This document shows, one piece after another, positions 4,511 to 28,414 of a stretch of 37,009 nt of DNA (the first letter of the stretch is position 1; each line of letters begins with the position of its first letter). Source of the DNA: Octopus bimaculoides (taxonomy: Eukaryota); assembly GCF_001194135.2 (NCBI RefSeq), contig NC_068987.1, forward strand, positions 46,989,657 to 47,026,665. The letters run 5' to 3'. Position numbers and translations under genes: made by a program. Below the pieces are notes generated by a model. It made no database searches and had not been told where the DNA came from. It saw only the letters and a list, made by a program, of their open reading frames with translations.

Positions 4511-5240
4511 GCTGTTTACAGCAGTGCTTGGAAGGAACGTGTGTAGCGTGTGATCGTCGCATTAAATATGACAGAAAGTTGTCATGGCGATAACTGCTCA
4601 GAGGCCTACGCAAAGTTGCAGAAAGTATATGGAGAGGAGTGCATGAGCCGTACACAAGTAATATGAGTAGTTCAGACGTTTCCAAGACGGCCGAAAAAAT
4701 ATCGATAGTGACAAACGCTCTGGAAAACCTGCAAAACTGAGAAAAACATCGCAGATGTGGGTGCAGGTGTAAGGGGAGATCGTCGAATCACCATCCGTGA
4801 GTTATCAGAGGATGTACAGATGAGTTACGGTTCAGTTCAGTCCATTATCACTGAAGATTTGGGTATGAGACGTGTGTTTGCCAAGTTTGCGCTAAAACTG
4901 CTTTCAGCTGACCAAGAAGGCACCTGGTTTTCAGTTGCACAAGAGCTCCTTGATTGTGTCGAGAATGGTGAAAACTTTATGAAAACTTTGCATAGGCCTC
5001 TGAGCAGGTATCGCCAAGCTTTTAGCAAGATTTGATGCAGATTCTCTGCTCCACTTCTCTGTCATGTTCAATGCGACGATCACATGTTACACACGTTCCT
5101 TCCAAGCACTGCAGTAAACAGCGGAAGTGAACTAGAACATTAAACCTTTGTGCGCATGCACAGCAGTGTTCAAGGTCAATCTGTGCCAAGCAGCTTCATT
5201 CTGTGTGCTTTAGCTTCGTTACTATTGATCACACCACGTA
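4511..5240 (+). mobile_element. Degenerate mariner (Tc1/mariner) element with an inverted duplication of its 5' end
   Basis: Frameshifted transposase N-terminal fragments on +: SEAYAKLQKVYGEECMSRTQV, FRRFQDGRKNIDSDKRSGKP, DRRITIRELSEDVQMSYGSVQSIITEDLGMRRVFAKFALKLLSADQ. The segment 4983-5122 is an inverted copy of 4511-4618 and reads MTEKVEQRICIK on the minus strand. The right end CACACCACG-TA resembles a mariner TIR plus the TA target. Confidence 0.85.
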
Positions 5241-7660: not shown

Positions 7661-7677
7661 TTTTTTTCTTTCTTCAG
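7661..7677 (+). other. Splice acceptor (polypyrimidine tract + CAG) opening the giant exon at 7678
   Basis: TTTTTTTCTTTCTTCAG at 7661-7677. Composition switches here from very AT-rich intron-like DNA to coding-like DNA. Confidence 0.75.
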
Positions 7678-7754
7678 TCAACGAACAATGACGTTCGGGT
7701 CGTCCCTTTAAAGCACAAGAAACAGGTGACGGCAGGAAATCTTAAAGGTAAAAT

Positions 7755-10700
7755 ATGGATAGGGCAGAAAGTAGGGCGGCTCCTAGTCGCATTGAGGTCG
7801 GTCGAACAGCTAGCATGGAGAATACCAGAGATGATATGATAAGATTACCGTTTATTGGCACCTTCCCACGAACTAGGAGGGATAAAATAGATGAGAGTAA
7901 AATACCATCTACCCAGTCTCCAACTAATTATAGACAGAAAATAAGGAGTGGCATATTTGGAAACAGAACATCGCGATTTCTCGAAGAAGTTAAATCTAGC
8001 GAACAAAAGGGGACTATATTTGGTTCGCTACCGCGGCGCAAAGTCACAGAAACTTGTACATATCCGGAACATCATAGCTCATTGCCCCGATCACATTCAG
8101 ACATGAAAACAATCAAGAGTTTGATTAAAGAAACTAGTTTTCCTGTGTATGGTGATGGTCGAAATACCTTTGAAAGAACAATTATAAACACAGATTACCG
8201 AAGATCTCCTTTCGCTATTCGATCGCCTCGTTCAAATAGTAACAGTCGTGCCAGTATGCATGACTATGCACTCAGTAGCGACGAAGGTTCTTGGTCGGCT
8301 GCGGATAGTGGTCATATTGATGATATGGAAAGTTCTGTGCTTAGTACGGCATCCTCGCAAAATGCTGGAGATTCCCATACAGACGAACAGAAAAAGAAGA
8401 AGAAAAACATCAAAAGTTTAGGTAAAAGAATCAAAAAGGGTCTTTATTCCCTTTTTCACAAACATGAAAAACGAGACAGAGACAGCGGTGTAGACGATAT
8501 CCGGCAAACTGATGAAGAAAGCAACAGGACATACTGTAGCACTGATTCCGAATTTGATCGCGACAGCATGAGCAATTTTTCTTACACGTCCAGCGTCAGT
8601 CGAAACAATTACGGAAGCAACGCAACTCTGTCACAAACTGGCCCCAGTGAAGATCGACTCAGTATGGTATCGTCATCAACGTTGTCAAATTATGGAAATG
8701 ATAGACATAAAGCCGGTATGCGTAGGGTGAGAAGTATGGGTTTCCAAGATAAGAAAAGTACTTTAGGCCACTTTGCTAATGCTACTCCTTATGATAAACC
8801 TGATGGAGATGTTACTTCGGTGTCTGCTCAAAATCAACGGAAGACATATTCGCATCAACTAGGCGTGTCTCCCGGAAGTTCAACTGACATCGTGGACAGA
8901 ACAGTGCAAGATCGCACAGTTTTGGCAAATACGAATATACATGAAGATAGTAATATGAGACGCAGCTTAACATCGGAGAAAATTAATAAAGACTCGAAGG
9001 TGACCAACAGAACATCATTACCATTTATGGGAATTAATTTGCATTCTAAGAAGAGCCAAGAATTCTCAGTGTCTTCGCAGAAAACACATATTGATCAAAC
9101 AGCTTCTGTGGAAGACCGTACTGTAAACACAGATAATAGCATGAGACGCAGCTTGACATCAGAGAAAATTAATAAAGACTCGAAAGCGACAAACAGAACA
9201 TCATTACCATTTATGGGAATTAATTTGCATTCTAAGAAGAGTCAAGAACTCTCAGCATCGTCGCAAAAAACACATCTTGATCAAACAGCTTCCACTTCGG
9301 AAGACGTTTCTGCTTCTAAATCAAAGAACACCAGTAAAGTCAGCCGTGGGTTGTTTGGTTTCTCCTTTCCCAACAGATCTAATAAAAGTTCGTCTTCTCA
9401 GCTCAAATCCACAACCAAAAATAATAAAGGCAACACAGAAGGGGAGGATACATCCTACAAAACTTCACAAGAACGGAAATCTTTGGAAGAGAAACACGGT
9501 AGAATGTTTCTTCCAATCTTGTCTGGACCAAAAGCCAGCAAGAACAGGTCGGTTGTTGTAGTAGCAAGCAGTATAGTTGGCATGTCACCATTAGGACAGT
9601 TGTCCGACTCCAGCTTTTCAAACATCGAAGATCTGAAAACCGACCATTTGAACGATAACATTCCGTCGTATACGGAACCGGACAAATTTAAGGATTCTCA
9701 ACAGCATAAAACGATTGCAAACTTCTTAGAAAGGAAAGACCCCAGAACACAAGATCTCTCCCCTGCAAGGAACAATAACCAAGTCTATCCTTCGGCAAAA
9801 CAGTCTGGTACTGAAAACTCTCGATTAAATAACATCCCAGGAGAAAATTCTGTAAAGTTGACAACGTCTAAGCGAGAATTTAACAAACATTCAAATTCAG
9901 AAAGTCATCAGTTGGGATACAATCTCTTACACAACCAAAGAACTGCTTCCCCAAAATCTGTTTCTATGCACCAACGCCCTGTTCCAGAAACAGCTGCCAC
10001 TGGTGTTGAAAGCCAGATCAGTAAAGAGAAGATAAATCTCGGTAACGAAAGCGTCATTCTGTCACAGGTTACCCAAGTCCGAAATGAAACCAAAAACGAG
10101 GAGAAAATATCTTGGCACACTAAAGAAACGAGTGGGAAAACAAATGAAGAGGATCATAGCATTAAAGAGGATAAAGCAAAAACTGTGTTTCAATATAGTA
10201 CTGAAAGCAATTACGATGATGATGATGACGACGATGATGACAATGAGTTCTTTGATATCGAAGAACCGACAGATAAGGCCACCACAAGTTCTGATGGAGA
10301 TAACACAGATTTGGAGTTCTATGACAGCGTAGAACTCGCTCCAGACACCCTTGGACAAATAAAAGAAGACAGTAGCGGAGAAAATAAAGCCGCCTTTGGT
10401 TATTCTTCAGCTACACAAATTAAAACCTCTTTTGAGCATTTAAGTCAGGACAAAATCCATCGCCAATCGGAAGACACCATTTCGAGTCGTTCTGAAATAA
10501 GTTTCAGCAAAAGCAATGTTTCACCACATCGATTACATAATGTACCAAACTCATCTGCTCCGGCGACTCAAGCTTTTAAGACTCCTTACATAACAGACAA
10601 TGGTGCCGAATGGATCAAGAGAACAGATTACAGCCAAGTTCTCACAAAAACCGATGATGTCGAAGAAATAAAAAGAAGATCCGATATTATTGTGCAAAAA

Positions 10701-13700
10701 TCGAAGAATATCGACGGAAGCAGTTTTGGCGAAAGGCCAACACTAGATTTATCAAATAGAGTAAATCAAATACAGAGAACAACAAACCAATCGAAAGCTG
10801 TTGAAGAATTAAGTAAATTCAATGAAATCAGTAGTTCAAGCAGAAAGACTGTTTTGTCAACCTCCCCTTCGTTATCAGCAACAAGAAAAACTGTTCCTTC
10901 TGGTAATATTACCAAGTCATTGGAATTATTCCAGAAAGAAATTACCAAAGCTGGAAAACAACCCATAAAAATAGAAGAAAAGACACAAATCTCAACTAGG
11001 GAGGAGAAAGGAGTTTGTGTGAGCAAACATGGGAGAGATAGTGCTGAAGAACCGCCTCCAGAAAGAGATAAACAGGATTTTGGTGTTAAGCCACTGAAAG
11101 ACAATAAAGATTCCCTTAGGATGTTTAGCGGTGCAGACGGTATTACCAACGCTAAATACAGAGGAATCAGACAAACCGAAGAATCCATCAAATATATTTC
11201 AAGATCTAACAGCGAGAACATTCCAAAGAAAGAAGTTGAAGAAGCGGCCATAATAAATGATGTTCCCACTCGGAGAAGTGATGACATCAAAACTGAGAAC
11301 CAATATGTTGGTGAGCAAAGCCCTGGGGATCAATCGATAGAAAATGTCAGGAAAGACGACATTGATGAAAATAAGAGCAAAAACATTATTAAATCAGATG
11401 AAAATCAATCCAGAAGGATCACTAACGATAATTCCAAAATCAAAGTTGATTCTGAAACCGCCTTATTGTCAACAGTCAGGAAATCAGATTTGGAATCGAC
11501 TGCAAATGACACTAAAAACATATATTCTTCAAAACATCCTAAAAGAGAAAAAAGCGAAAAGTCTTGGAAAAAATCTTCTAAAGAGAAGACTGATTCTTAC
11601 ACAGAACATACAGATGGTCGTTCACACAAGGAAATAGCCGAAAGCCAGCTTCCTCATCCTGAGAAAACAAAATCTACTGGAAGCGAAAATATTGCACAAA
11701 AATTCGATAGGCCTGAAGATAAAAATGAAGCAAATCTTGGTATTGGGGCTACTGAAAATAGGGAACCAATTCAGAAGGAAAAACCCACTAAGTCTGTGAG
11801 TGAAATGACTCAAATTTTCGATGCGAGTGGTAAACATTTGGGTTATGTCAGCATGGAAGAGATTCTACGACTTCTTAGTGAAAAGCTGAATCTTCCAAGT
11901 GCTGTCAACTTGGATCAAAATACCAGTAAAGATGCCGCTACGTCTGTGACCAGTAGCTTACATAGAAAGATGGAAGGGGCACCAGCAGAAAAAAGTTTTA
12001 AAGCAAAACATAGTTCGTCGTATGAGTCGAAAGATAAATTCGACAATGAACCCCATAGACATACCAGCAGTAAAGCTGACATGCTAAAGGAAAAAGAGTT
12101 TCATGATCACTCGAAGATTGATAGTGGAGTTGACAACAAATTCAGCAAAAAAGTTAGCCCTAAACATAGCAGTGAATCTAGCCCTGAGTCCAGCAGTGAG
12201 TCCAGTCCTGAACTCAGCAGTGAGTACAGCACTGAAGTGAGAAGTGAAACCAGTTCTGAATCCAGTACTCAGGCCAGTATAATAGATAAAAACGAACATC
12301 TCACTATCTTAAGTGAGCCAACAAGTAATGACACAAGTACTGAACACAGCGTTGAGTCTAGTCCCGAATTGAGCAGCGAGTGCAGTCCCGAACTGAGTAG
12401 TGAGTGCAGTCCAGAACTCAGCAGTGAATCCAGTTGCGCAGAACTCAGTGGAGATTCCAGTAGCCCTGACGTCAACAGCATCCCTAGTAGTGAGGCTAAC
12501 AGTGAAACAGAGAGCGACCAATTCCATAGTAAAGTCAGCAACCGAGAATTCAGCTTTGAACATAGCCGTGTATTGAATGAGGAAGATAAAATTAAAGATG
12601 GTGACACCAGTTCAGATTTCAAGCTCAACTTTGTTTCTGAGAATAAATCCAGTGATGATTCTAAGATTGACATCACAAGAATCATAGATAATAAAGATAG
12701 TGTAGATGTTCCAAATAAGGAAGACAGGACAAGCTGGTCCAAACGTCTTCACAGCGATTCAGATTTTGCTGCTAAGAATGAGAGTCTTGATAATCAAGTT
12801 GAAATCGATCAAGAAGCCAATATTGAAATTGGGAACAGAGATTTAAGCGAGAAACAATTCAAGGGTTCCGAAAAGGCCCTTGATACATCACTTGATAGTA
12901 ATACTGCTCACAAAACTGATAAGGAATCTAAACTCCAAACCAAAATTGATGCAGTTGATAATCGTAAAGTGAATTTAAGCCCAACTTCAACTGCGGAGAA
13001 TTTAAATAACATGAGTGATTTAAAGCATCATAGATCTGAAATACTTCAGGCAAGATCTACAGTTTCAGACGATGTTGGCGTTACGTCCAAGGAAGTTTTC
13101 ACTGAATTTGGTCAAAAACAGAAACCAGACGACGTAAATATTGAACAAATTGTTTCTGAATTCGTTGACAGTAAACATAAGTCAAGTGAGTATGATCTTA
13201 GAGCTTCCAATCATAAAAGCAGCGATGGAATTTTAACTAAAACGAATGATGCCAAAAATAGCAATAGCAGCGAAAATATTAAAGTCATTGAGATTTCCCG
13301 GAGCAAAAGTGAAAGTATTGAATGCAAAGAGGAGAAAGAAAACAAATACACGGAGCCAAACAAGCCAAAAGTAATCAGGAAATACAGTAAAAGTTCAAAA
13401 CATGTTGATATCGATCTTTTGGCAGACCAAATGAAGGAAGCAGATGTAAGCAGCAAGACAGATAAACTGGAAGATTCTTATCAGATAGTTTCGGAACAAA
13501 ATAAAGTGAAAGGTGACAAAGACGGGAAAACTGAAGAAAAATCCCGGCCGAAACAGAATCGCAAATCAGAACAGAAAAGAAATAAGAAGAAAAATAATAT
13601 AAATAAAACATCACGGAATAATGAAAACTTTAGTAGCGAGGATAACTCTGCTAAATCCAGCGGTGCCGATATTCCAGGTAAGACATCGTCTGAAAGACCT

Positions 13701-16700
13701 AAAAGAAGTGCGGTAGAATCTTCTGAAAGTGACGGTTCCAACAGTTTGGCCAAGTCTACGAGTAAAGTTAACCGTAAAGTAGATTTGGACAACGAAAGAG
13801 ACTACAAGAAAGACACAACATCAGATAATTCTTTAAAAGAGCAATCTCTTCTGTTAAGTCAGTCTAATGTGGTTGAAAAGAAACTTGCTAGCGATAGCAG
13901 AAGTTTTGAAGGAATTTGCGATAGAAAGATTAAGCCACTTCCGGTTAAGGATGATAATGTTAAAAAGATAACAGGCCAGATTTCTCCGTCTGTAAACAAT
14001 GAGCAAATTATGAATAAGAATAGCATAAAAGATGATTCTACTGTACTGAGTGATAAGGAAAACAAAATTATGGTGATTAAAGGGCGAGATAAGATTAAAT
14101 GTGACATCACATCATCATCGGACGATTCATCATCGTCTGGTAATGTTGATAAAACAAAGCTTTCTAGGTCTGTAGCTGTTAATGTGAAAAAAAGGGTTTC
14201 GTTTGACTTGAAACCTGACGTCAGCAAACATCCAGAAGATACAAAAGATAATGAACGTGTTTTGGATACGAAAAGCAACTACAAGGAGAAGAAATCTAAA
14301 CACAAGTCAAAGATGAAAACTAGCAAAAATATCGAAAGCAGTTCTGCAATAATCAGTGAAACTAGGAGTAAAATAAAGTCGGAAAACTCTTTATTAACAA
14401 AAGAGAAGAATGGAGAGGCCATTTGCACTGAGGAATCAAATAACGCTCCATCAGATATTATCCTTATCGAAAGTTCGAATAAAGAAACGGATGGGTTAAA
14501 ATTCTTCGAAAGACATCAGGCCGACAACGAGGTGATGGCATCCGTCAAAAAAGAGAAAGGAGCTACACCTTTTAAAACTGAAGAGTCTAAAAAGTCGAGG
14601 AGTAGAAATATGACGGCTGGTGTAGAAATATCAGAAATCCAGAAAGCGTCATATCTTTCCAGTAGAATCGGGTCGATTCATAACGAAAGCAAAGAAGACA
14701 AACAGTTCAATTTGCCACATTCTGGAAGTGAAATAAAGGGAGAAACGCGTGAGGGATTAGGTGAATCAAATTTTAAAGAAACACACGACCAAACAAACGA
14801 CACAGCGAACGAAAGAAAAGATTTCATTTCTGCTTGTCCAGAAATCAATGAGAAGGAACTAGAAATCGGAAATTTGAACGTCAAAGATCAGAATTATGCC
14901 AAAGATATCACCGAAGAAACGAAACTGGGAACCGATACCAATTTGAAAGAAAACTGGGGGATTTCGAGAATACAAAATGAAAATTTCGAAAATACATCTT
15001 GCCAGAAAATTAAGCAAAGTACTGTTGGTGTTAGTGAGAAAGAGCTTGATCAGGTAAGAGTGTATGAGACTGTGTCAAACGGGACTGTCGCTGAAGTAAG
15101 ACATGAAGGAAAAGATGCTGTTAAAATAGACTCTGTCAAAGACGAAGAGTCAATAAGTAAAGAGTTCAAAGAAAACAGCTTGTCAGAAAATAAAGAAGTC
15201 AATTTCATCTCTTCATCAAAATCGGCCGAATATACTGAAGTTAAAACCTCAAAGGAGGCAGTGACGAAAGATGTTGAATTAGATGGAAATGAACAGAATG
15301 ACAGGGGTTTCTCGAATAGAGAGGGAGAAAGTTGTGCAGAAGCAGATATTGACAAGCTGAAAGTTGAACAAAAAAAGGAGGATTCTGAATCTGAAGTTCG
15401 AATTGAGAAGAAGGAAGCTCGAATTATTGAAGATCTTTGTAAATACGCGGTGGAGGGTATAACAGAACCGTTGGAGGTTCTAAATACTCAGTATGTAGAA
15501 AACACGGAAATATCGATGGAAATTGTCTATGATAACGTAGCTGATGTCTCCATCGAATCTCATGAAATTGTACAAATAAATGTTGGAGAAAGTCTTACTG
15601 ATCCTGTAAACTTACATTGCAACGATCTAATGGAGGACTTGACGACATCTTTGAGTGATCTACTGGAAGATATTCGGACGACACCAACAGAGGTTCTAGA
15701 GAACGAGTTTAAGGAGATCTCGGTTTGTCCCGATGATATTTGTTGTAAACATTCAACTGAAATGTTTATTGATGTAAACAATGAACCAGAAGTCCTCCAA
15801 GATTCTGTATGCGTTCTGGAAGCAAACACGTTAGAAACACCAAAGGAATCAATAACCGACCAAAACGAGAGATTAGCAAAATTAACAGAAATTATAGATT
15901 ATGAGGTTATACATGTTGGCGGTGGCATGGAGCTTAGTGTATCAATAGAACAAGCAGATACAGTGCGTGAGGAGAAAAGAGATATTTCCGACGAGACCAA
16001 AGATGCTGAAGAAACATTAAAATCTGCACAAGAACTATATTCCACAGAATCTACAGAGCCTCTACAATATGAAGAAGTCAGTAAAATTGTTACGGCGGTG
16101 ACGAGAGCTCATTTCAAGGACTTGGAAAGAAATTTGATTGATTGTCTGAGCTACTCAGGTGACAATAAAGTAGAATATTGTACAGATTTGGTGGACTTGG
16201 AGGACATAGACCACGAAGAAAACATCATAGAGATCACTGCCGTGGAACATTCTAGAATAGAGGGTATTCCGATTGAGACGTTTGATGTTGCATCAATAGA
16301 CGAAATCATAAGCTTTGTGAAACTTGTGAATACGATATCTGAAGATCCGATCCATGATTTAACTGAACCTGTAGATATTGTCAAAGAAGTTCTTGCAAAC
16401 GCTTCACTAGAACCTGAACACGTGCTCTGTCAAAAGATTACTGAAACTCTATTGGAATCTATAAAAAGTCAACAGAAACTTGACTCTCAATCTTCTTCAG
16501 TTGCCAGTCGAAAAGATGACTCCAAGAGTTTCACTGGTGACAAAAGCCAAGTAATATCTGAGGAAAAATCTGACAAAAATTACTCGCCTGTAGAGTCACA
16601 ACAGTCACAACGGACATCAAACGAATTAGAAGAACACAGCGTAAAAGATTCTAAAGAACTTACTGGTAAAGTTAATGACAAAAGTATGTCTCTTTGCCTT

Positions 16701-19700
16701 GAAAGTGAACAACGAGGGGTTGATTCGAAAATAACTACAGATAAGACTTCAAACAATTCAAGCTACCTATCACCGACAAATGTGAATGATTTTAATGAAT
16801 CTGAAAAAGATAAGGAAACGTTAAATGATCAAATAGGTTCAGATGATATTGAAACATCTAAATATAAGGAGAAATTGGCAAATGAAGATAGCAATGAATC
16901 ACTGGAAACAACAAGTTGTCGGGCAGTTGTCAAGGAAAAATTGACATGTGACAAAGATGGCACTGTTAATGAGATTGATGATAAAGAATTAAAAACGAAT
17001 AAAGATAACGATGCCAAATTGACTGTAGAAATTGTCGGAGCTGATAACGAACTAAGTAAAGCGGAAATAATTGAAGGAAAAAAAGAGAAAAAAGAAAGAG
17101 AAGAAAAAGTAAAAAGAGAAAAGAAAGAAATGAAAGAAAAAGAGAAACGAGAAAAGAAAGAAAAGAAAGAAAAAGAAAAGCAGGAAAAGAAAGAGAAGAA
17201 AGAAATGGAGAAAAGAGAAAAGCTAATGAAAAAAGAGAAGGAAAGGCAAGAAAAGATAGAGAGAAAGTTGAAGGAGAAAATGAAAAAAGAAGGAAAAGTT
17301 GAGGCAGAAATAATGGAGGAAAATAGGAAGAAAAATGAAGAAACGAAGATTGAAGAGAAAGAAATCAGAACAACTGACATTGTAGAAGATACAAAGAGGA
17401 AAGAAAGAAAGAATGAAGGAGTAGAAAATATAGATGGAGTAAATCTCGAAAATAGGGAAGAAAAAATAGAAGAGATGTCGGTCGTGAAGATGGAAGAATC
17501 TACAAAAACAGAAGAAACTCCTGTCTTTGTCGAAAATAAAGAGAAGACAATTAAGGAAGGGGAATTGAGGAAAATGGCATCGATATTTGAGAGAACGAAT
17601 GAGAAGGACTTTCAGGAAAGACAAACTGAAGAAGTACTGGTCGTGGATGGAAAGGAGGGAAAGGAAAGGAAAGAAGAGAAAGCTGAGGTGCTGTCAGTTG
17701 TAGAAAGAAAGAGAGAGAAAGGTATAATAGAAGAAAAATCTAAAGAAGTTTTGGTCGATAAAGGTAAAGAATTGAAGAAAGTTGAAGTCATCGAAGGAAA
17801 TGAAGAAAAGAAAATGAAAGAAATAAAAAGTAAAGAGATTTCTGTGGTTGAAAGAAAGAAGGAGAAAAATGAAAAAGAAGAAAAGCAGGTCTTTGAAGAA
17901 AAGAAGGAAGAACTAAGAAATGAAGAAAAAACCGAAGAAGTGTTAATCGTTCGTGACGAGAAGAAAGTACAGCTAGAAGACAAAATTAAAAGGATATCAT
18001 CGGTCGCTGACGTAAAGGAGAAACAGGCGTATATCATGAAAGAAATGAAGAATGAAAATGAGGCTAGGGAAGAAGCTGAAGGTAAAGTAGACAGGGAACG
18101 GGAGAAAATTAGTGAAAACGAACTTGTAAATTTGGAAAATGAATCAGAAGTTATGGGGGATAAAGAGAGAAATAACAAGGAGGAGATAACTATGGATAAG
18201 AGAGATAAACATGATCAACAGCAGTTGTCACTTAAGGATCGTAATGAGGAGGAGGAAGAGGAGGAGTTTTACGACAGTGTGGACATATCACCACGTGAAA
18301 GTCCAAATGAACTCCCAGCCGAATTGTGTGAACAGAACGATAATCTCAAGCCTAACGAGAGTTCAGTTAAAACGCAGGATTTAGAATCGGTGACACCTCC
18401 TTCTTCAACTCAGTCACTGAAAGAATTGAAAAGTCCCTGTTTAGATAAAGATGCCACTCTGAGCGACACTCAAGAGAGTATTACCGCTGCTACTGTTGAT
18501 GTCACTAAAGATATAGACATAGCAAAACAAGTAACGGAAACAGCAAGTAGTTCGTTACCGGACATTTCCGTGGCGTCATCTACTTCGGAAAACGACAGCT
18601 TAAAGGAGCAAAGTACTAACAACAATGATACAGACGATAGAGAAACTATGTTATCACAGCGTGACAGTAAACATGACAGTACTGGTTTAGATATTACTGA
18701 TATAGCTCTAGCGAAGCAGGAAAAGGCTAAAGATAACGATATCACAAGCATCAGTAAAGAAGCAACAGCTACAACAGCAACAACAACAGTAGCAACAAAA
18801 ACATCAGCCACACCAACAGTAGCAAAAATCAATGGAACAGATCTTCAATCCAATGAAATTGAAGAGACTATAGATACCTCAGATTCAACAAATATCTTGA
18901 ACACTGGACAAAACAAATATGTACCTCCTCAGCGTGAAAGCTGTGAAGATATGTCGTTAGCAGATACTAGTGCTTCGAGCGGAAATGAGAAAATAAGCTA
19001 TGAAAAACCAACAGAACATAAGATAACTACAAACATGGAGGATGATGTTAAGGAAATTAGTTTTCCTGAGAAAGTCGAAAACAACAGAGAAATTGCTTTG
19101 TTAGCTTCAGATAGTGAAGCTGAAATGACCGTTCCTACTGAGAATAGATCTGAAGAACTGTTGGAGAGTGCAGTTTCTGAAAACGCAAACTTAAACAATG
19201 ACGAAATATTAGTACAATCCATTGTTCATGAATCGAAAGAAATTTCTCCCGGTATTTCAACGACTGATGACACTAAAGATGAAGTTGTTGCATTGACACA
19301 AGCAAACAACGTGTCGTCTGATTTAGTCGAAAAAGGTATACCTCATACGACGATCGAAAGTTACGAAGAAGAGGAGAAAACTCAAGCCACACCCACCAAA
19401 AGTGGTGTTCTTTATGCTGTTGATGCTCTAAAGAGAATGTTTGGCTTTTCTTCGAGTGAAGAACCTGAAACATGTGACAAGAATAAGGAATGTATAATCA
19501 CAAGTGAAGCCAATGACAACAGGCAGCAATTGGATGGCAAAAAGGACAGTGTGTGTCACGATGAGGATAATGTTTCTGTAGAAGTCACGAAAGGAATCAA
19601 TGAACGGGATACACCAGAAAATAAGGATTCCAAAGACTCCGAGGTTGAATATTTTGACAAGAACGACAGAAGTGATAAAACTGATACATATTTGGAAGAA

Positions 19701-22700
19701 CAAATATCAATTCAGCCGACGTCTATGGAAGATAAGAAAGAAGATATAAACAATGCAAATAAAGACATTGAGATCGAATCTTCAAAAGAGGAATCCGGTG
19801 AAATGAAACACATCGGGGATATTGTTAGTTCTAAAGGGAAAGATAGAATTATTCCTTGTGATGAAATAATACAGGTGTCGGAAGATGAAGATCATGCCAG
19901 CAGTGAAGACACAACCGATCGAGAAAGTAGCTCAGAATCTTCAAAATCTGTAGAAGAATCAAACAGTGAAATAAGTGAACCAGATTCTGCAGAAAGTTCA
20001 GGAATCATTGCTGCAGATTTAGAAGAAATGCCTCTGTTTTCTCCTCAAAAAATATCAGAGGAGATAAATATTGAAGATAGCGGTGAAAAAGCCTTCAATG
20101 AGGAAGACCAGAAAAACACATTTCATGAAGAAATTTCTACAAATCTTAACAATAAAATTGAAGAGTCAAAAGAATTTATAACCACTGAAGATGGGGAAAC
20201 AGAGCTTAAACTGTCGCCAGTTATTTCTAAGATTGATAACTTAGAAGATGGCTGCATCGAAAACATGGTCTCTGTTATTACAGTCGTTACAGATGAAGAT
20301 TTGTCCGGTGACTCGTTGCCGGAATCAGATATTCTCAAAAATGAAGACGATGCAAGACCTCAGTCAGTAGACTCTGATGTTGACGCAGAATTTATTGTGA
20401 CATCTTCTGGGTCCTCAGATATTGTAACACCAGAAGAGGATCTTGAACCTAAAATTAAAAGAAAGCCACCAGTTCCACTACCAAGAACAACTTCCAAGTC
20501 AGAAGCAAAGGATTCTAACAAGGAATCAGAATCATCTGAAGAAATCAAAGATTCAATAGAAACGGAATCAATGAATGATTATCCGGAAGATGGACAAACT
20601 TCAGTAGAAAGTAAAAGTAAAAAACCAGTTCCTTTACCAAGAAGTGGTGTTAAAACGGCTGAAAGTGTAAACGAATCATCTGAAACTGACGAATCTATAG
20701 AGGAACAGTTCAAAGATCTTTCGAGCAGATTTAACATGTTGCCGCCAGAAATGGGTGAGAAATTAAATTTTAAAAAGAAACCGCCAAAGTTACCGCCAAA
20801 ATCTAAACTTAGTGGTGAACCAAATAGCACCGAACAAATTAATTCTTATGATGATGAATCTGAAACTAATGATTCTGAAGAAATTAAAGATATCAAAAGT
20901 AGATTAAGTATGTTGCCAGCAGAAATGGGTTTCAAACTTAATTTTAAGAAGAAAACTCCACCGCCACCACCATCGAAACTTGCAACAAAAGACGATAAGA
21001 CAGGTGAAATACCTGAAGCTGTAAGTGATGATCATAATGAGAAAGAGAAGTTAATTGAAAATATAGAAATAAAGGAACAGGACAATAAAATCGAACCAAC
21101 AAGTTCTGGCACTGAAGAAGTTGATGATGCACAAATGGATCTAAAAAGAAGAATGAGTATGCTATCGGCAGAAATGGGAGTTGAAATTAATTTGAGGAAG
21201 AAAAGCCCTCCAAGTCCAGCACCAAAGGTGAAAAGGGGTGATAATTCAACTAACGCGGAAGAAAATAAATTAACTGAAGGCGACAAAGGCTCTGAAAGTA
21301 TTGACGGGTTGGAGCAAGTTTCTGATAACATCAATAATACGGACGATTCAGACGAACAATCAATGGATTTAAAAAGTCGGTTAAATAAATTATCTAACGA
21401 GATGGGAACTCAAGTAACTCTGAAGAAATCAGCCCCGGTACCGCCGCCTAAATTTACCAAAGACAAAACGAAATTACAATCGGAAGATGATGAAGAAGAA
21501 ATGGATTTGAAGTCACGAATGAATAAACTTTCTTCGGAGATGGGTACTGAAATTAATTTAAAGAAAACCCAAAAGCCCCCAGTGCCTTTACCAAAGACTG
21601 CAGCGGCAAAGATCAATAGTGTGACGGAGGTAGAGTCAAAAGATCCAGAGGAAAGTGGGGAGACCTCTTGTACATTCGTTATTTCTACAAGTATTGATGA
21701 CGTAGAATGTGATGAATCAGATAGTTTTACGTTTGTAATCAATAGTGATATTACCGAAGATCAAACCGTATCTGCAATCAGCGATAGCTCTGGAACAAAA
21801 TCTGAAACAACTACAGACGGTGACGTAAAAACAGCCGATAGCAGTGCAAATAAAGTAGAAGGTGATAATGAGGACTCTAACAGTTTTACTTTTACAATCA
21901 ATGAAGTGGCTGATAGTGATAAACCGAATTCTTATGACATCACTATATGTCCTACAGAAACAAATGAGGCCCCAGTGGTGGAAGAAAAGAAACCAGAACC
22001 GGAAGTTAAAAAAGAATTAACCGCCGAAGAGAAGGCTAAAGAGAGGCTAAAGAGAATATCGGAGATGCTGGAAGAGGAACGAAAGAAGCCGAAGGAGAGT
22101 ACTGTTGATGCCATGAAACGGAGGTTAAGTGGAAGTTTTTTGCAAGAGGAAGTAAAAGTCGATCCTGTAAAAAGGAGAAGCAGTCTTACCAGTAAACCGG
22201 CACCGAAAAAACTTGGCAATTTAGAAAATTTTCAGAAGAAATTTGGCGCTGCCAATGCACCTGGAATTGACTTTGATTCTATGAAACGAAGATATGGTCT
22301 GTTACCAGCTAAAGACAGTGTCAAAAAGGTGGCACCAGTTGAAAAGAAAGACAGTAAACTATCTAAAAGTAAAGATTCGTCCGAATCTGCCGCTAAAAAT
22401 GAAAATGTTACTGTTGAAACCGAAACGAAAAGTGTTGCCGAACCTTGTCCGATGACAACAGAAGACCAAGGAGACAAAACCAAAAATACTGAAGTTAAGG
22501 TTGCCCAAACAGAAGGAACTGTTGGAATCGATATAATCGAAGGAAAAGTAAGCGATAAAGGTAAGGAAGACGTAAACGAAAAGAGTAAAGTGGAAATAAT
22601 CAATACAGGTGAGGAAAAAGTTATCGATAATGAAAAAACAGCTGATATACCTGAGAGTGGGGACAAACAGACGACTATAGAAAAGAATGCCGATGACTTA

Positions 22701-25700
22701 AAATCTTCAAAAGAGATTATTGAATCGGAAGACAGTTCTAAAGAACTGAAGACTGTTTCGTCTGAGGTCGATCGTAAAGATAGTATTGATTCGAAAGAAT
22801 TATCAAACCAGAAACAAGGAATGCCAGACGCTCTGGAAAACACCGAATGTAAACCTGGCGTTAGTTTACAGAAATCTGATGAAGAAAGAATTAGCGATAA
22901 AATTTCTGAAGATAAAAGTCAGTCTAGTTCCGAAGAATTAAGCATTCAAAAACCTTTGTCTGTTACTGAAAGTACCGAAGATGTCTCTAAAGTAGATACC
23001 AAAGAGTCTCGGAAACTGGAGAATTCAGAAAAGCTTTCAAAGGCTCTTGAAAGTTCTTCAGATCTTAACAGGGATCAAAACTCTGTGAAGGATTCGAGTC
23101 TTGAAAAACAGGAAGGTTTGAGACAACCTACAGTTTTGGATCCAAAGGAACCTGGACAATATGATGATGTAGAAGATAGTGATACAGACAAAACATCTGA
23201 TAATGAGTCTTCGGTGGAAACTTCCAGAGAAAAACCAGCTGGAACTGTTAAAGATCATCTCGAGGTAGATGAGACTCAAAAAATATTGCATGAAGAAAAT
23301 AATAAACTTGAAGTAAACGAGGAAGAAGAAAATAAGGTAGGAGTAAAACAGGATGAAAAGAATAATCTGGGAGTAAAACAGGAAGAAAATAATAAGGTAG
23401 GAGTAAAACAGGAAGAAGATAATAATCTGGGGGTAAAAGGGAAAGAAGATATTAAATTGGGCGTAAATGAAATCAATATTTTCTCAGACGACACTAGTAA
23501 TGAAAAGTTAAAATCCAGCTACGATGTCCAAGAAGACTCTTGCGAATCTAATTCCCAAACAGAACAAACACTCTCCGATAAGGTAGATAAAAGTGAAGAT
23601 CAAACTAACATCACCAACAAAGATGTATCACAGCAACAAGTAACTGCTAAAGAAGGGGATGTATCGGAAAAAGAACAGCCATTAAGTGATGTAGATACTT
23701 CTACAAAACATATTGCTAACGAAGATAATCGGGATGCTGAGTTAGTGCAGGTAAAGGACAGTCAGGAGCCTGTTGCTAATGATGATATTCAGGATGCCAA
23801 GTTAGCCCAAATAAAGGAAAATGAAAATACTGAAAATAGGCGCCCAGAACCCAAGAATGAAATCAAATCAATCAAAGTTGAGGGTTTTAATATTGGTTTG
23901 CCAGAAAATATTGTCGGCACTGATAGTGAAGAAACGGATGAAGAATCTCCGAAAGTTCCACTCAATAAGGCATTCATTTTTGATCAGTTCAGGGATGCTG
24001 ACGAAGAGGAAGATTATGCTGATGAGGATGAAGCTGAAGATGATGATGACAGTGAAGAAATCGTAGAACGTTCGGGCGACAAATCGAGTAATTCACTTCC
24101 GTCTGAGGAATTAGTCGTTAAAGGTTTGAAGGAAAATAAAAATCTTGTTCGTCAGTCACAGTCAGAAGGTAAAAATAAGAAATTTATCAAAAGCTTTGAT
24201 GGTGACCGAAATATAGACGAGACACAGACCACCACCGAGATTCCATCGACAAAAGCTTTATCAAAGGAAAGAACTGTGGACCATAATGAACACGAGTCGA
24301 AGTTAGATAATGAAAAGGCTGTCAAAATGGAGTCGATTAAAGAACCTAAGTCCGTCACTTTAGATGACAAGTCATTTGAATGCACTAGCTCCACCGAAGA
24401 TACTCGAAGTAACAAAATACGACGTGCAAAGACAAAGTCGAAAATTTACACCCAACAAAATGCTGCAGAGAGCAAAACTGACATTGACAGCAAATATGAA
24501 AGAACTAGTAAAATTGTTGATAACAGTGAAAAGGTCACATCACAAGATAACATTTCTAAACTTGCCGCAAATACTGAACCACAATCGTCTTCCGAAAACA
24601 CAGATGTTTTGCAAGATATTATTCATAATATTAAGCAGACATTGCAAGAACGTAGCCTTAGCGACAACATTATATCTACGGTTATAGAATCATTGAAAAC
24701 CAAAGAGATTTTGGCTGATGTAACAAAAACAGAAGTAACAAGCAAAACAGATGTTCCATTCACCTCACACATTCCTGATGAGATTCTATCAGAAAACGCG
24801 GTCCAGAATAGCAAGCAATCATCCAGCCTGAACGAAAATGTTGATTTAAAGTCAGGCCCCAGCATCGACATTTTCGTATCCGAAAATGAAAAACTTGACG
24901 ATAAGTTTTCCAATAAGGCAAATCTTCCTGAAGCATCAGAACTAATTAAAGACATTACCAGTTCTATTGATATATCGAGTGAAGAAAACTANNNNNNNNN
25001 NNNNNNNNNNNNNNNNNNNNNNNNNNNNNNNNNNNNNNNNNNNNNNNNNNNNNNNNNNNNNNNNNNNNNNNNNNNNNNNNNNNNNNNNNNNNNNNNNNNN
25101 NNNNNNNNNNNNNNNNNNNNNNNNNNNNNNNNNNNNNNNNNNNNNNNNNNNNNNNNNNNNNNNNNNNNNNNNNNNNNNNNAACGATGAAAATGATGATAT
25201 GGATGTTTTTCTGGATGCAAATGAAAATATTGTTACTGATTCGAATATTGATATTAAAGATGAATCTGAACAGTCGGGAGAATTTTTCTTCACCATATCT
25301 ACGGAATTAGAAAATGCTGGAGACGAAGAAAATGACAATGAAGTAAATGTCGTGTTTTACATCGATGATAAACAGTCAGAATTATCAGTCGATGCAGACG
25401 ACAAATCCGAAGTGCAAGACGCCATTTTATTTGATGGTTCCGAAACCAACGTTGAATTTACTCTGGATTATAAATTTAATGAAGTAGACGATGTTTGTGA
25501 GGAGAAATACATATTAAATGACGATGCTATTGAGACAGAAATTCAAAGTGAAGAAGCAGAGAATAATTTGAAGTATTCTACAGATTATAATAAAATTAGT
25601 GACAGTAAGCGATGGTCTTCCGAAGATATGGGCGAAGAAACCACTACAGATAACACTGAAGAAGAATCAACTGTTTCTGTGACGGAACATTTGTCGTCTG

Positions 25701-28414
25701 ACATTAGTGGAGAGATAAATTTAGGAACACCAAATGAGTATAAAACATCAAACGACACTTTTGAAATGTCCCAGCAAGATAACTTGTTAGAAAAAACGAG
25801 TCCAGTTGCGTTCGAAAATGATGTTGGTAACTATAAGACCATAACGTCGTCTAAAGAAACTAATGACGATTTGAAAACGTCTGATTCAAAAGAGTTCTAT
25901 CAATATTCTAAAAAGGACAGCTTTGGGTCTGACACCATGGATTCGTCAGAAAACTATACTAGGACTGAAAGAAACGTCGAAGATACAAATAAAGTGTCAG
26001 ATACTTATTCAGATGGTTGTGATGAAGATGATGAGGTGGATAGTCTAATTGCAAACACTAGAAAACTTTTGCAAGGATTCCGTAAAATGAGGCTTCGTCA
26101 AGAAGAAGAACTTGAAATCTGGCGAAATCAGAAAGACAAGGATGTTTGTGATAGGGTCCCAACAGAGAGCTTAATCGGTAAACCGCCATACGAAGACATT
26201 CTACAGATAACAAATGAATGGGACAAGACAGATAAGAGTTGTGTAGATGACAGTGTAGATGAGACACACAGATATCAACAGAAACAAACAGAGTTTAATG
26301 ACACAGTAACTGTATCTCAGAAACACAAGGATTCTGAAACGTCTTCCGTCAGTTATAATGAGGATTTGTCACGTGACTCTCCAAGAGACTATAATAAAGC
26401 TGACACTATATCTTCACTTAAGACAGAAACAAAACCTGAAGCTGAACCTATGTCTAATATCTATGGAGAGACATTAGACACATCTTCGAGGTACCATCAA
26501 GAGACAGATGTGTTTTCTATGCCTCCTCCCGACAAAGAAGAGTTCGATAATAACTTCACAAATGCCAAAGATACCGCAAACAATTTAGAAAATGCGAAAA
26601 GGTCCAAAAAACATACGGAAATGGAGATTCGTAGGATTCTGATGACAGACTTATCACCGATACGAGAATTAGATGAAGAACAGAGCTTGCCAGAAACTAA
26701 CAATTTACAGGAGGAGTCTCAAGTACACAGTTTGGATATTCCTACGAACGATACTGTTCCTGCACCTTCCGATAGTCTCGTTAAAGAATGTGAAAAAGAA
26801 CCGTTATTGAACATCGAAATTGAGGTTGAAGGTGCAATTTATGATGAGACTAAACCAGTTGATGTTGCTACTGATAAACACTTGCCACCGCAAAAACCAT
26901 ACGTCAAGAGCAAAGAAGAATATAAAGACGATAATGTCGAGACTGTGATGGAAAAATGGGGTAGTATGCTTCTTCTTGATAAAGGTAGAAGTCGCAAAGC
27001 AAAGCAAAAGGACACCAAGACTCGGAAAAAGACATCAGACACTTCAGAACCATTGACTGAAAAAATATGCAATGTAACAAAAGATCAGGAACCAACGAAA
27101 GTCTGCGATACTGTCACAGCTAAGGAACCGAGTAAAGAAAAGAGTTTTGATGGTTCTAAACATTCGGAATCAACAAAAGTCCACGATACTGCTTTACTTC
27201 CGGAATCGCATAAAGAAAATAGCTTTGGTCGCTCCAAACTTCCGGAACCAACGAAAGTCCATAATACTGCTACACTTCCTGAACCAAGTAAAGAGAAGAA
27301 TTTTGGTACTTCCAAGCTTTCTGAAACAACCAAAGAACAAATCAGTGAAAAGTCCAAGATTTTAGAACCAAGGAAAGAAGATATTTGCGATTCCTCCAAA
27401 TTATTGAAACCTTTGAGAGAACAAATCGATGAAACCTTCAAACTTTCGGAAACAGCAAGAGAAAAGATCAGTGGAGACACGAAACTTTCGCAAACAGTTA
27501 ATGAAAATATTAAAGAAACCTCCAACGTTCCAGAAACACTCGTAGAAAAGAAGAGTGAAACTTATAAAGCACTGGAACCTTTGAAAGAAAACAACAGCGT
27601 AAGTCGAAAACTTCCGGAACCAAAAGAAGAAAAGTTCTTCCATACCACCAAACATCTGGATTCTTCGAAAGAAAACATCAGTGATATTTCTGTGAAAAAC
27701 AAGGAGGTTGAAGAGTATGGAAGGTTCCAACAGAGCACAGAGGGTCAGAGAAAAGTAGAACAAAAGAATCAATCTGAGTTTGATTCTCAACCCACAAAAA
27801 TAGCCGAACCTATCAGAAAGGCTGAAGATGATAAAAAGGATCAAACGCCCGAGAAAACTATTCGAAAGGATCCAAGACGAAAGGATTTAAGAACTTCAGT
27901 GAACGGTTCCTCTATGAATTCCGAAAAACCGAAAATCGAGCCAGTGTTAGACAAACCAAAGAAAACAAGAACTGCCGGAATGAGAAATGAGCAGCTGAAA
28001 CCTTGGCTATTTTCACATATGCAAAGTCCTGAGGATGAGGAAATGGAAAGTTTCATAAAGGTTTTGACTCAAAAGGACAACAGAGAGCGTAAGCAGAATA
28101 AAAAGGATGATGTTTCAATTTCCACTAAGGACAGGGATGTACCACTGGATAAGAAACAAGAGACAGAACCAGAAACCAAATACACCGAAACGCAGAAGAG
28201 TAACATTGTTGAGAGCATTGACAATACAAGTGTCACACACCCCAAAATATTGTCACAGACCCCAGAGGATATCGAAAGGAAATTGCTTCGAACTGACGGT
28301 AGTGAAAACGAGATGGTCTCAATAAGTGGTACTAAACCAAATAATGAAGTCCATGTTGAGAAACTTAATAGAAATTCTAACGTGGAAGATGTCAGAGAAA
28401 CATCGGCAAAGATT
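7755..28414 (+). CDS. Giant single-exon coding region, about 6,890 aa, acidic and low-complexity (E/K/S/D/T-rich), probably largely intrinsically disordered. It probably continues into downstream exons.
   Basis: 5,745 stop-free codons from ATG 7755 (A at -3, G at +4) up to the gap at 24992-25180. After the gap a second open frame of the same composition runs 25181-28414 (NDENDDMDVFLDANE...SAKI). That frame ends exactly at a consensus donor ATT|GTGAGT (phase 0); without splicing it stops at TGA 28433-28435. The region lacks the long non-coding microsatellites and TE insertions that crowd the flanks. Confidence 0.9.
8955..9292 (+). repeat. Coding tandem duplication, period 186 nt (62 aa)
   Basis: MRRSLTSEKINKDSK(V/A)TNRTSLPFMGINLHSKKSQE(F/L)S(V/A)SSQKTH(I/L)DQTAS at 8955-9106 and 9141-9292. 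Confidence 0.95.
12165..12470 (+). repeat. Coding Ser/Glu/Pro repeats, period 24 nt (8 aa, SSE(S/C)SPEL), two clusters
   Basis: SSESSPESSSESSPELSSEYSTE and VESSPELSSECSPELSSECSPELSSESS. Confidence 0.9.
17079..18200 (+). repeat. Purine-rich E/K low-complexity coding block; core KKEKKEREEK...KMKKE at 17079-17291
   Basis: Almost pure A/G codons with alternating Glu and Lys/Arg. Loose EVLVV/EISVV sub-repeats occur further on. Confidence 0.85.
20715..21596 (+). repeat. Five dispersed copies of a ~30-aa cassette D(L/I)xxRxxxLxxEMGxx(L/I/V)x(F/L)(K/R)K + Pro-rich tail
   Basis: Copies start at 20715, 20889, 21138, 21366 and 21504, all in frame. Confidence 0.9.
23301..23471 (+). repeat. Coding minisatellite, period 30 nt (10 aa, N(K/N)(V/L)GVKQEE(N/D)), 6 units with a 60-nt super-period
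   Basis: Units start at 23301, 23331, 23361, 23391, 23421 and 23451. Confidence 0.9.
24992..25180. other. Assembly gap (189 N) inside the giant exon. Other gaps: 3886-4438, 5618-5999, 28538-28963, 30298-30840, 33192-33740, 34760-34994, 36120-36171
   Basis: N runs read directly. Confidence 0.98.
27089..27680 (+). repeat. Coding repeat array: three 26-aa units (78 nt), then about eight 14-aa units (42 nt)
   Basis: E(P/S)TKVxxT...SKxx units at 27089, 27167 and 27245. Then ExxxExxxxxxKL(S/P/L)-type units every 42 nt from 27323 to 27659. Confidence 0.85.

What the first reader, a model, noticed from the sequence alone, without database searches (positions are those of the whole stretch)
10215..25225. 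Multiple FFAT-like (VAP-binding) motifs spaced along the giant protein
Seen: poly-Asp followed by EFFDIEE (10245-10265); DGDNTDL-EFYDSVE (10314-10334); EEEEEE-EFYDSVD (18264-18284); NDENDDMD-VFLDANE (25205-25225); and a weaker QFRDADE (23985-24005). Known: the FFAT consensus is EFFDAxE preceded by an acidic tract, and it binds the MSP domain of ER-resident VAP. Y at position 3 and S at position 5 are tolerated. Inference: aromatic residues are rare in this protein, so finding the same F(F/Y)D core repeatedly right after acid tracts looks selected. It suggests a very long, multivalent ER-tethering protein at membrane contact sites.
Basis: partly seen in the sequence, partly recalled or inferred. 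Interest (0 to 1): 0.72.

Follow-up and report, generated by a model that had tools for sequence, protein, structure and literature searches.

The report
FFAT motifs in giant octopus protein
A roughly 6,900-residue, domain-free, disordered and uncharacterised Octopus bimaculoides protein carries three near-canonical and one weaker copy of the short FFAT motif that docks proteins onto the endoplasmic reticulum; this is far more than chance gives, but binding is untested and nothing yet shows that it bridges two membranes.

Summary
All five strings are at the stated coordinates. I scored them with the Mikitova & Levine 2012 FFAT scheme; my implementation reproduces all 16 of their published scores.

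- **Scores:** EFFDIEE 1.0, EFYDSVD 1.0, EFYDSVE 2.0, VFLDANE 2.0. The published cut-off is 2 or less. The next best site scores 3.0-3.5, and QFRDADE scores 4.5, so it is not a motif.
- **Chance:** shuffles that keep global or local composition expect 0.06-0.20 sites at 2 or less. None of 13,200 shuffles reached four.
- **Core triplet:** every F[FY]D in the 6,823 residues read is an EF[FY]D..[DE] behind an acidic tract.
- **Phospho-FFAT class:** at chance level.
- **N gap:** as written it breaks the frame. VFLDANE lies in a second frame with no stop in 1,078 codons and matching codon usage (r = 0.97). It is probably the same exon, which would need a true gap length of 1 mod 3, but this is unproven. 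Public gene models stop at the gap.
- **The protein:** O. bimaculoides A0A0L8I0Z0, "uncharacterized". I found no Pfam domain, transmembrane segment, PDB relative or homologue.

VAP docking is the best reading (about 0.55). Orthologue conservation could not be tested. A role as a contact-site tether lacks a second anchor. I class it as a new candidate member of a known kind, of moderate interest.

The parts
7755..24991 (+). Pre-gap part of the giant ORF: 5,745 codons from ATG 7755, plus a trailing partial codon 'TA' at the gap edge. Equals NCBI protein P0001 and UniProt A0A0L8I0Z0 of Octopus bimaculoides.
   Evidence: In-frame TAA at 7749-7751. The ATG has A at -3 and G at +4. Both public models start at this Met.
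7661..7677 (+). Polypyrimidine tract plus AG (tttttttctttcttcag). It looks like the splice acceptor of the giant exon, which would make 7678-7754 the 5' leader.
   Evidence: Read from the sequence. The splice-site role is inferred only.
10215..10265 (+). FFAT1: nine Asp plus Asn, then core EFFDIEE (10245-10265). Score 1.0; the only penalty is Ile at position 5.
   Evidence: Modelled as coil.
10296..10334 (+). FFAT2: flank GDNTDL plus core EFYDSVE (10314-10334). Score 2.0. Its core starts 23 residues after the FFAT1 core.
   Evidence: Modelled as coil.
18246..18284 (+). FFAT3: six Glu plus core EFYDSVD (18264-18284). Score 1.0. It sits at the C-terminal end of the roughly 400-residue E/K-rich block.
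24992..25180 (.). Assembly gap (189 N). The reading frame changes across it as written. A true length of 1 mod 3 would join the two ORFs.
   Evidence: Both public gene models end here.
25181..28414 (+). Post-gap ORF: 1,078 codons with no stop and the same composition and codon usage as the pre-gap ORF. It is not in any public protein model. It ends at a donor-like GTGAGT (28415-28420); otherwise it stops at TGA 28433-28435.
25187..25225 (+). FFAT4: flank ENDDMD plus core VFLDANE (25205-25225). Score 2.0, with penalties for V at position 1 and L at position 3. It begins eight codons after the gap.
23985..24005 (+). Score 4.5, so it is not an FFAT-like motif by the published cut-off.

Best explanation
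The window holds one giant exon, about 20.7 kb including the short leader (7678 to 28414), of an Octopus bimaculoides gene. It encodes a protein of at least 6,823 residues that is acidic, rich in Ser and Lys, and domain-free. The protein is probably cytosolic and intrinsically disordered.

Embedded in it are three strong conventional FFAT motifs: D9-N-EFFDIEE, GDNTDL-EFYDSVE and E6-EFYDSVD. There is also one moderate motif, ENDDMD-VFLDANE. The most likely function is the known FFAT mechanism: the acidic tract is captured by the basic face of the MSP domain of ER-anchored VAP (or a MOSPD2-type relative), and the core then locks in with F2 in the hydrophobic pocket.

Inferred consequences:
- The N-terminal pair, with cores 23 residues apart, could occupy both MSP domains of a VAP dimer, as proposed for other proteins with two FFAT motifs.
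- The two EFYDSV[ED] copies carry Ser at position 5, where a phosphomimetic abolished ER targeting of AKAP220's EFFDSFD. They may therefore be switched off by phosphorylation, whereas EFFDIEE cannot be.
- With docking points at about 12%, 51% and 85% of the chain, the protein would be laid along or looped onto the ER surface. There it could present its other repeated linear motifs, such as the PxxP modules and the E/K block, to cytosolic partners.

Shown here: the motifs' presence, their scores and their non-randomness. Inferred: VAP binding, cytosolic exposure and regulation.
For: - Scores of 1, 1, 2 and 2 against the published cut-off of 2 or less for detectable ER targeting (PMC3261905). 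My implementation reproduces all 16 published scores.
- There is a clear gap to the next best site, at 3.0-3.5.
- 0 of 13,200 shuffles (global, or in blocks of 200, 50 or 25 residues) reach four sites at 2 or less. Expected: 0.06-0.20.
- All three F[FY]D tripeptides are preceded by E, followed by D/E at position 7, and sit behind acidic tracts.
- Only the conventional class is enriched; phospho-FFAT-type sites are at chance.
- The motifs are outside all internal repeats.
- FFAT2 and FFAT3 encode EFYDSV[ED] with five third-codon-position differences and unrelated flanks. They are therefore not a recent copy, and the peptide is kept despite nucleotide divergence.
- There is no hydrophobic segment of transmembrane strength (maximum 19-residue Kyte-Doolittle mean 1.42), and the N-terminus is polar.
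- FFAT1 and FFAT2 are modelled as coil.
- Precedents for paired motifs: IncV has two FFAT cores 24 residues apart, and PTPIP51 and ORP3 have two each (PMC9213790). AKAP220 has EFFDSFD plus a second motif nearby.
Against: - No binding data exist.
- Conservation in orthologues, one of the four published criteria, could not be tested.
- Ile at position 5 of FFAT1 is bulky for the small Ala pocket.
- FFAT4 lies beyond an assembly gap, in another frame as written, and has two core substitutions.
- Basic clusters such as KKKKKNIKSLGKRIKK could be nuclear localisation signals, which would limit access to cytosolic VAP.
- The motif cores also fit a generic LIR pattern.
- Expression of the ORF was not checked.
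Confidence: 0.55

Rival explanations
1. True inter-membrane tether. The protein is anchored to a second organelle or the plasma membrane, and uses its FFAT motifs to hold that membrane against the ER at contact sites.
For: - Multiple FFAT motifs.
- The donor-like GTGAGT at 28415-28420 means further C-terminal exons, possibly with an anchor, may lie outside what could be read.
- Polybasic patches and PxxP modules could attach indirectly to membranes.
Against: - There is no transmembrane segment, lipid-binding domain or any Pfam domain in 6,823 residues.
- There is no recognisable downstream exon in the repeat-rich, gap-rich 8.6 kb that follows.
- Many FFAT proteins are soluble ER recruits rather than tethers.
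Confidence: 0.2
2. The acidic-aromatic sites are selected, but for a different reader. Candidates are Atg8/LC3 (a LIR core [WFY]xx[LIV] behind acidic residues: FFDI, YDSV) or another acid-plus-aromatic binding module. They might also have dual FFAT and LIR use, as discussed for AKAP11.
For: - FFAT1-3 each contain an acidic-flanked F/Y-x-x-I/V.
- AKAP11 combines an FFAT motif and a LIR (PMC13303681).
Against: - A LIR does not require E at position 1, D at position 4 or an acid at position 7, yet all three strong sites keep all of these.
- FFAT4 (FLDA) has no LIR core.
- From memory, the stricter xLIR pattern is not met by any of them.
Confidence: 0.15
3. Compositional accident. An extremely acidic, low-complexity protein throws up FFAT look-alikes that have no function.
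For: - D+E make up 21% of residues, and acid runs are common.
- One site at 2.0 is only a few-fold above expectation.
- The reversed sequence gives one 1.5-scoring site, but this is the near-palindromic FFAT1 region itself.
Against: - 0 of 13,200 shuffles give four sites at 2 or less, including shuffles confined to 25-residue blocks that keep the acid tracts local.
- EF[FY]D is expected 0.048 times and observed 3 times.
- The related phospho-FFAT class is not enriched.
Confidence: 0.08

Closest known systems
[quoted passage not shown]
   Same: - It is a large, mostly disordered scaffold.
- It has a conventional FFAT with Ser at position 5 in an acidic N-terminal region, and a second motif close by (PMC3261905).
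- Its VAP-dependent ER recruitment has been reported (PMC13303681).
   Different: - No sequence homology was detectable, and no Pfam AKAP family matched.
- The single match to an RII-binding-helix pattern is at chance level.
- The octopus protein is about 3.5 times longer and has further FFATs thousands of residues away.
Proteins with two FFAT motifs (Chlamydia IncV, PTPIP51/RMDN3, ORP3)
   Same: They have paired motifs a short distance apart. The IncV cores are 24 residues apart; here the spacing is 23. Such pairs are proposed to engage two VAP molecules at once (PMC9213790).
   Different: - Those proteins have a defined membrane anchor or lipid-transfer domain and are bona fide tethers. No such module was found here.
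- The IncV and PTPIP51 motifs depend on phosphorylation, whereas the motifs here are conventional acidic ones.
Canonical FFAT lipid-transfer proteins (OSBP/ORPs, CERT, Nir2, VPS13A/C)
   Same: They share the same motif grammar: an acidic tract followed by E-F-[FY]-D-x-x-[DE].
   Different: They have one motif per protein, placed next to folded lipid-transfer and membrane-targeting domains. Here there are three or four motifs in a domain-free chain of about 6,900 residues.

Membership tests
FFAT-motif VAP interactors (criteria of Mikitova & Levine 2012) | Criterion D: no more than 2 suboptimal elements among the acidic flank and core positions 1, 2, 3, 4, 5 and 7 | tested here: met
   Scores are 1.0, 1.0, 2.0 and 2.0 for four sites, and QFRDADE scores 4.5. 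The scoring was validated on 16 published examples.
   0 of 13,200 shuffles reach the observed four sites at 2 or less. For EF[FY]D, 0 of 5,000 shuffles reach the observed three.
FFAT-motif VAP interactors (criteria of Mikitova & Levine 2012) | Criterion A: the motif is exposed to the cytoplasm | tested here: inconclusive
   There is no signal-like N-terminus and no transmembrane-strength segment. Basic clusters could be nuclear localisation signals. Localisation is not known.
FFAT-motif VAP interactors (criteria of Mikitova & Levine 2012) | Criterion B: the motif is not part of a helix or folded domain | tested here: inconclusive
   FFAT1 and FFAT2 are coil in a single-sequence AlphaFold2 model, with pLDDT about 50. 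The context is polar, with Pro 2-3 residues after each strong core. No Pfam or PDB match was found. Single-sequence models are weak evidence, and FFAT3 and FFAT4 were not modelled.
FFAT-motif VAP interactors (criteria of Mikitova & Levine 2012) | Criterion C: key residues are conserved in orthologues more than their flanks | not testable with these tools
   No homologue was retrievable. Three word-indexed searches returned nothing and did not return the protein itself, so they are uninformative. The exhaustive representative search returned only the protein itself. Two metagenome scans were empty.
FFAT-motif VAP interactors (criteria of Mikitova & Levine 2012) | Direct binding to the VAP MSP domain, lost in the K87D/M89D mutant | not testable with these tools
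   This needs an experiment. Complex prediction with an MSP domain was not possible with the tools' input restrictions.
Membrane contact-site tether | A second module that binds another membrane or organelle (transmembrane anchor, PH, C2, lipid-transfer domain and the like) | tested here: not met
   No Pfam domain was found in about 7,000 residues. The maximum 19-residue hydropathy is 1.42. No coding exon is recognisable downstream. Exons outside the window cannot be excluded.
AKAP110/AKAP220 family | Conserved AKAP family region (a Pfam AKAP family) and a PKA RII-binding amphipathic helix | tested here: not met
   There is no Pfam hit. One helix-pattern match (SDNIISTVIESL, starting at nt 24660) compares with 1.8 expected by chance.
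Phospho-FFAT (Di Mattia et al. 2020) | S/T at core position 4 in an otherwise good motif | tested here: not met
   The best sites score 3.0. Counts are at shuffle level: 2 observed against 1.24 expected at 3 or less.

The most novel reading that the evidence does not exclude
A cephalopod-restricted giant disordered ER rope. This would be a single-exon protein of about 6,900 residues with no folded domain. It would be pinned to VAP at three or four widely spaced points: one bivalent pair that includes a non-switchable motif, and sites that can be switched off by phosphorylation at Ser 5. Between these pins it would display an E/K block of about 400 residues and a battery of PxxP modules. It would thus act as a multivalent organiser, or condensate scaffold, of the ER surface or ER-cytoskeleton interface in octopus cells. 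No known VAP client has this architecture.
Probability: 0.2. Interest if true: 0.65.

Novelty: new member of a known kind. Interest (0 to 1): 0.42.

Why it matters
FFAT-VAP docking is the main way that proteins are recruited to the ER surface. Known clients usually carry one motif, or at most two, next to folded domains.

If it binds VAP, a chain of about 6,900 residues with three strong motifs would be an unusual multivalent ER scaffold. It would also give a first functional handle on an orphan giant octopus gene that is truncated in current annotations.

On the practical side, the analysis shows that both public gene models end artificially at an assembly gap and miss at least 1,078 codons.

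Tried and rejected
- **Homology searches.** Three word-indexed searches (N-terminal 1,500 aa, post-gap 1,078 aa, FFAT3 region 600 aa) gave no hit. They did not even return the protein itself, which is in that collection. I treat them as uninformative rather than as evidence that there are no orthologues.\n- **Exhaustive HMMER search** of the only hydrophobic region (nt 15105-16754): only the protein itself.\n- **Two metagenome scans:** nothing.\n- **PDB sequence searches** of the whole protein and of the motif peptides: nothing meaningful.\n- **Pfam** on the whole protein, the repeat units and the N-terminus: nothing above the cut-offs.\n- **AlphaFold2** of nt 15255-16454: pLDDT 33, unusable, so no fold search was run.\n- **AKAP idea:** no family domain, and the helix pattern is at chance.\n- **WH2 idea for the MDLKSR...EMG...LKK repeat:** no Pfam support.\n- **Phospho-FFAT enrichment:** none.\n- **Internal duplication as the source of EFYDSV[ED]:** rejected. 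The flanks are unrelated, five codons differ at the third position, and no repeat covers the motifs.\n- **Scoring matrices.** The Slee & Levine 2019 and Di Mattia 2020 position weight matrices were not available in the library, so I used the 2012 scheme.\n- **Literature searches** for the accession or the peptide: nothing.
Full report
**What is in the window.**
The window is 36% G+C, rich in microsatellites, and contains eight N gaps. It holds one enormous open frame on the + strand. From an in-frame TAA at 7749-7751 the frame runs from ATG 7755 without a stop to the N run at 24992. A second + frame runs without a stop from the right edge of that gap (25181) to TGA 28433-28435.

A pyrimidine tract plus AG at 7661-7677 precedes the ATG, which has A at -3 and G at +4. 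A consensus-like donor, GTGAGT, sits at 28415-28420 after a complete codon. The simplest reading is therefore a single exon of about 20.7 kb that contains the start codon and may splice on to exons I could not find; the 8.6 kb downstream is microsatellite and gaps.

An exhaustive HMMER search returned one protein only, 100% identical and 5,744 aa long. Look-ups place it on Octopus bimaculoides chromosome record CM046607.1 (GCA_001194135.2), and it equals UniProt A0A0L8I0Z0, "Uncharacterized protein". The retrieved locus is base-for-base the same assembly as the window.

**The gap, tested first as requested.**
With the N run as written (189 bases), the two sides are not in frame. The frame that carries motifs 1-3 and 5 reads 42 junk codons after the gap and stops at 25308-25310. 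The frame that carries VFLDANE has 0 stops in 1,078 codons, whereas the other two post-gap frames have 45 and 144 stops. Its amino-acid composition correlates with the pre-gap ORF at r = 0.96, and its codon usage at r = 0.97.

The left edge ends in a partial codon "TA". The two ORFs join if the true gap length is 1 mod 3, which is compatible with an estimated length. Continuity is thus likely but not proven; a stop or an intron inside the gap cannot be excluded.

Both public models stop at the gap. The UniProt model adds 19 residues taken from a third frame ending at about 25431, which is an artefactual splice. Motif 4 is therefore in no annotated protein.

**Checking the observation.**
All five strings are at the stated coordinates. 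I took the published scoring scheme from Mikitova & Levine 2012 (PMC3261905, Table S2A). The table as stored differs by 0.5 from the paper's own Table 1 for a few rare residues, so I also fitted a variant that reproduces all 16 published Table 1 scores exactly. Both versions give the same scores here:

| Motif | Score |
|---|---|
| EFFDIEE (behind DDDDDN) | 1.0 |
| EFYDSVD (behind EEEEEE) | 1.0 |
| EFYDSVE (behind GDNTDL) | 2.0 |
| VFLDANE (behind ENDDMD) | 2.0 |

The paper's cut-off for detectable ER targeting is 2 or less, and it found only 76 such sites in the human proteome. The next best site in this protein scores 3.0-3.5. QFRDADE scores 4.5, because it has R at position 3 and the flank KAFIFD, so it fails.

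**More than chance.**
I used 3,000 shuffles each for four regimes: global, and within blocks of 200, 50 and 25 residues. The block shuffles keep the acid tracts where they are. The expected number of sites at 2 or less is 0.06-0.14, and no shuffle reached four. For sites at 1 or less the expectation is 0.003-0.015, and no shuffle reached two.

With the Table 1-fitted matrix the expectations are 0.08-0.20, and again none of 1,200 shuffles reached four.

Aromatic residues are scarce (F 2.05%, Y 1.33%, W 0.16%). There are only three F[FY]D tripeptides in 6,823 residues. All three are EF[FY]D with D/E at position 7 behind an acidic tract; 0.048 EF[FY]D are expected, and 0 of 5,000 shuffles reached three.

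As a specificity control, the phospho-FFAT class (S/T at position 4) is at chance, with a best score of 3.0 and 2 sites observed against 1.24 expected. The reversed sequence gives one good site, but this is only the near-palindromic FFAT1 region read backwards.

**Not a repeat artefact.**
Internal repeats exist: a 186-nt tandem duplication at 8955-9292, repeats with 24-, 30- and 78-nt periods, and five units of about 42 aa at about 20655-21650. None covers an FFAT motif.

FFAT2 and FFAT3 encode the same peptide, EFYDSV[E/D]. Their DNA differs at five third-codon positions and their flanks do not align. The peptide has therefore been kept, or reached twice, despite nucleotide divergence. This is suggestive of constraint but is not a substitute for orthologue data.

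**What the protein is.**
No family can be assigned. I found no Pfam domain in any part, no PDB relative by sequence, and no homologue other than the protein itself in 1.84 billion cluster representatives for the one hydrophobic, acidic stretch. The metagenome scans were also empty.

The three word-indexed searches also returned nothing. Because they failed to return the protein itself, I regard them as uninformative.

The composition is E 12.8%, S 12.7%, K 11.1% and D 8.6%. Mean hydropathy is strongly negative almost everywhere, and the most hydrophobic 19-residue window scores 1.42, below transmembrane strength. The N-terminus is polar. AlphaFold2 on the least polar 400 residues gave pLDDT 33.

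In a second model covering FFAT1 and FFAT2, both cores are coil at pLDDT of about 50. Each strong core is followed by Pro within two or three residues: EEPTD, ELAPD and DISPRE. The picture is a giant intrinsically disordered protein that is probably cytosolic.

**How it most likely works.**
The sites match the FFAT grammar at every scored element. The best-supported mechanism is therefore the established one: electrostatic capture of the acidic tract by the basic face of the MSP domain of ER-anchored VAP, followed by lock-in of the core (Di Mattia et al. 2020, PMC7705450; Mikitova & Levine 2012). Three further points are inference.

1. The FFAT1 and FFAT2 cores are 23 residues apart. This resembles IncV, where the cores are 24 apart, and other two-motif proteins proposed to bind two VAPs at once (PMC9213790).
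2. The two EFYDSV[ED] copies carry Ser at position 5. In AKAP220's EFFDSFD, S5 is tolerated, S5A strengthens ER targeting and S5E abolishes it. These two sites could therefore be switched off by phosphorylation, whereas EFFDIEE cannot. Ile at position 5 of FFAT1 is a real weakness. However, the paper notes that unusual substitutions occur in motifs preceded by at least seven packed acidic residues, and FFAT1 has nine Asp.
3. The sites lie at about 12%, 51% and, if the gap joins, 85% of the chain, so the chain could be pinned to the ER at several points.

I put functional VAP binding at about 0.55.

**Why "tether" is not supported.**
A contact-site tether needs a second anchor. None was found in 6,823 residues, and no downstream exon was recognisable. 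The protein may still continue beyond the donor-like site. Indirect attachment via the PxxP modules or basic patches is conceivable but untested. I put this at about 0.2.

**Rivals.**
- A generic LIR core ([FY]xx[IV] behind acidic residues) is contained in FFAT1-3. A LIR, however, does not explain the invariant E at position 1, D at position 4 and acid at position 7, and FFAT4 has no LIR core. Dual use cannot be excluded (about 0.15).
- Pure compositional accident is made unlikely by the shuffles (about 0.08), although FFAT4 alone would not be convincing.
- Basic clusters might be nuclear localisation signals. A nuclear location would restrict access to VAP.

**Comparison with known systems, and novelty.**
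Functionally, the closest known proteins are large scaffolds with paired FFAT motifs (AKAP220/AKAP11) and the two-motif tethers (IncV, PTPIP51, ORP3). Membership of the AKAP family fails the test: no family domain was found, and the helix pattern is at chance.

The 2012 survey remarked that AKAP220 was unique in having two strong motifs, and that GLTP and FAPP2 homologues never have three. Three strong sites in one domain-free giant chain are therefore unusual, but the kind of element is well known. Verdict: a new candidate member of a known kind, with the observation largely confirmed and the interpretation partly supported.

Noticed in passing
window 20457-21650 (+, inside the giant ORF): Five units of about 42 aa with consensus xxDExxMDLKSRxNxLSxEMGxxxNLKKxxPPxPPPK (invariant D, R, L, E-M-G, K, P, K). 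Two shorter KKP(P)VPLPR sites lie upstream. [KR]xxPxxP occurs 6 times against 0.96 expected. There is no Pfam family, and WH2 is not matched. It looks like a multivalent SH3 or proline-recognition module of unknown partner.
   Followed up: partly
window 17055-18250 (+): A block of about 400 residues made almost only of E, K and R (up to 76 charged residues per 100), in the style of KKEKKEKEKREKKEK. It ends directly in the Glu tract of FFAT3. It could be a single alpha-helix spacer or a cytoskeleton-binding region; this is not tested.
   Followed up: no
window 24977-25431: Both public protein models are truncated at the N gap. UniProt A0A0L8I0Z0 ends with 19 residues (IRIISRCRRQIRSARRHFI) read from a third frame ending at about 25431, which is a spurious splice across the gap. 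At least 1,078 further codons (25181-28414) are unannotated.
   Followed up: yes
window 8955-9292; 12156-12448; 23292-23467; 27080-27335 (+): In-frame tandem repeats inside the ORF: a 186-nt (62-aa) duplication at 92% identity, 24-nt SSPELSSE-type repeats, 30-nt EENNKLGVKQ repeats, and 78-nt repeats.
   Followed up: partly
window 10008-10079 (+): In a single-sequence AlphaFold2 model, 24 residues (ESQISKEKINLGNESVILSQVTQV) are predicted as a beta-hairpin with pLDDT 88-96. This is unusually confident for this otherwise disordered protein. It may be an artefact of the fragment end.
   Followed up: no
window 24660-24695 (+): SDNIISTVIESL matches the pattern of a PKA RII-binding amphipathic helix and resembles Ht31/AKAP-IS-type helices. 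However, one match is what chance gives (1.8 expected), so it is only a lead.
   Followed up: partly
window 35926-36365: An exact 194-nt duplicate lies on both sides of the 52-N gap (35926-36119 equals 36172-36365). It looks like an assembly artefact at the gap.
   Followed up: partly
window 4712-5032 (+): An isolated 107-codon open frame (…ITIRELSEDVQMSYGSVQSIITEDLGMRRVFAKF…) has a weak helix-turn-helix hit below the cut-off (HTH_41, E = 0.003). It is probably a transposase remnant in the upstream intergenic or intronic DNA.
   Followed up: partly
window 25283-25303 (+): FFFTIST lies 26 residues after the FFAT4 core and is the best phospho-FFAT-type site in the post-gap part (score 3.0). The spacing echoes the FFAT1/FFAT2 pair, but the score is at chance level.
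   Followed up: partly
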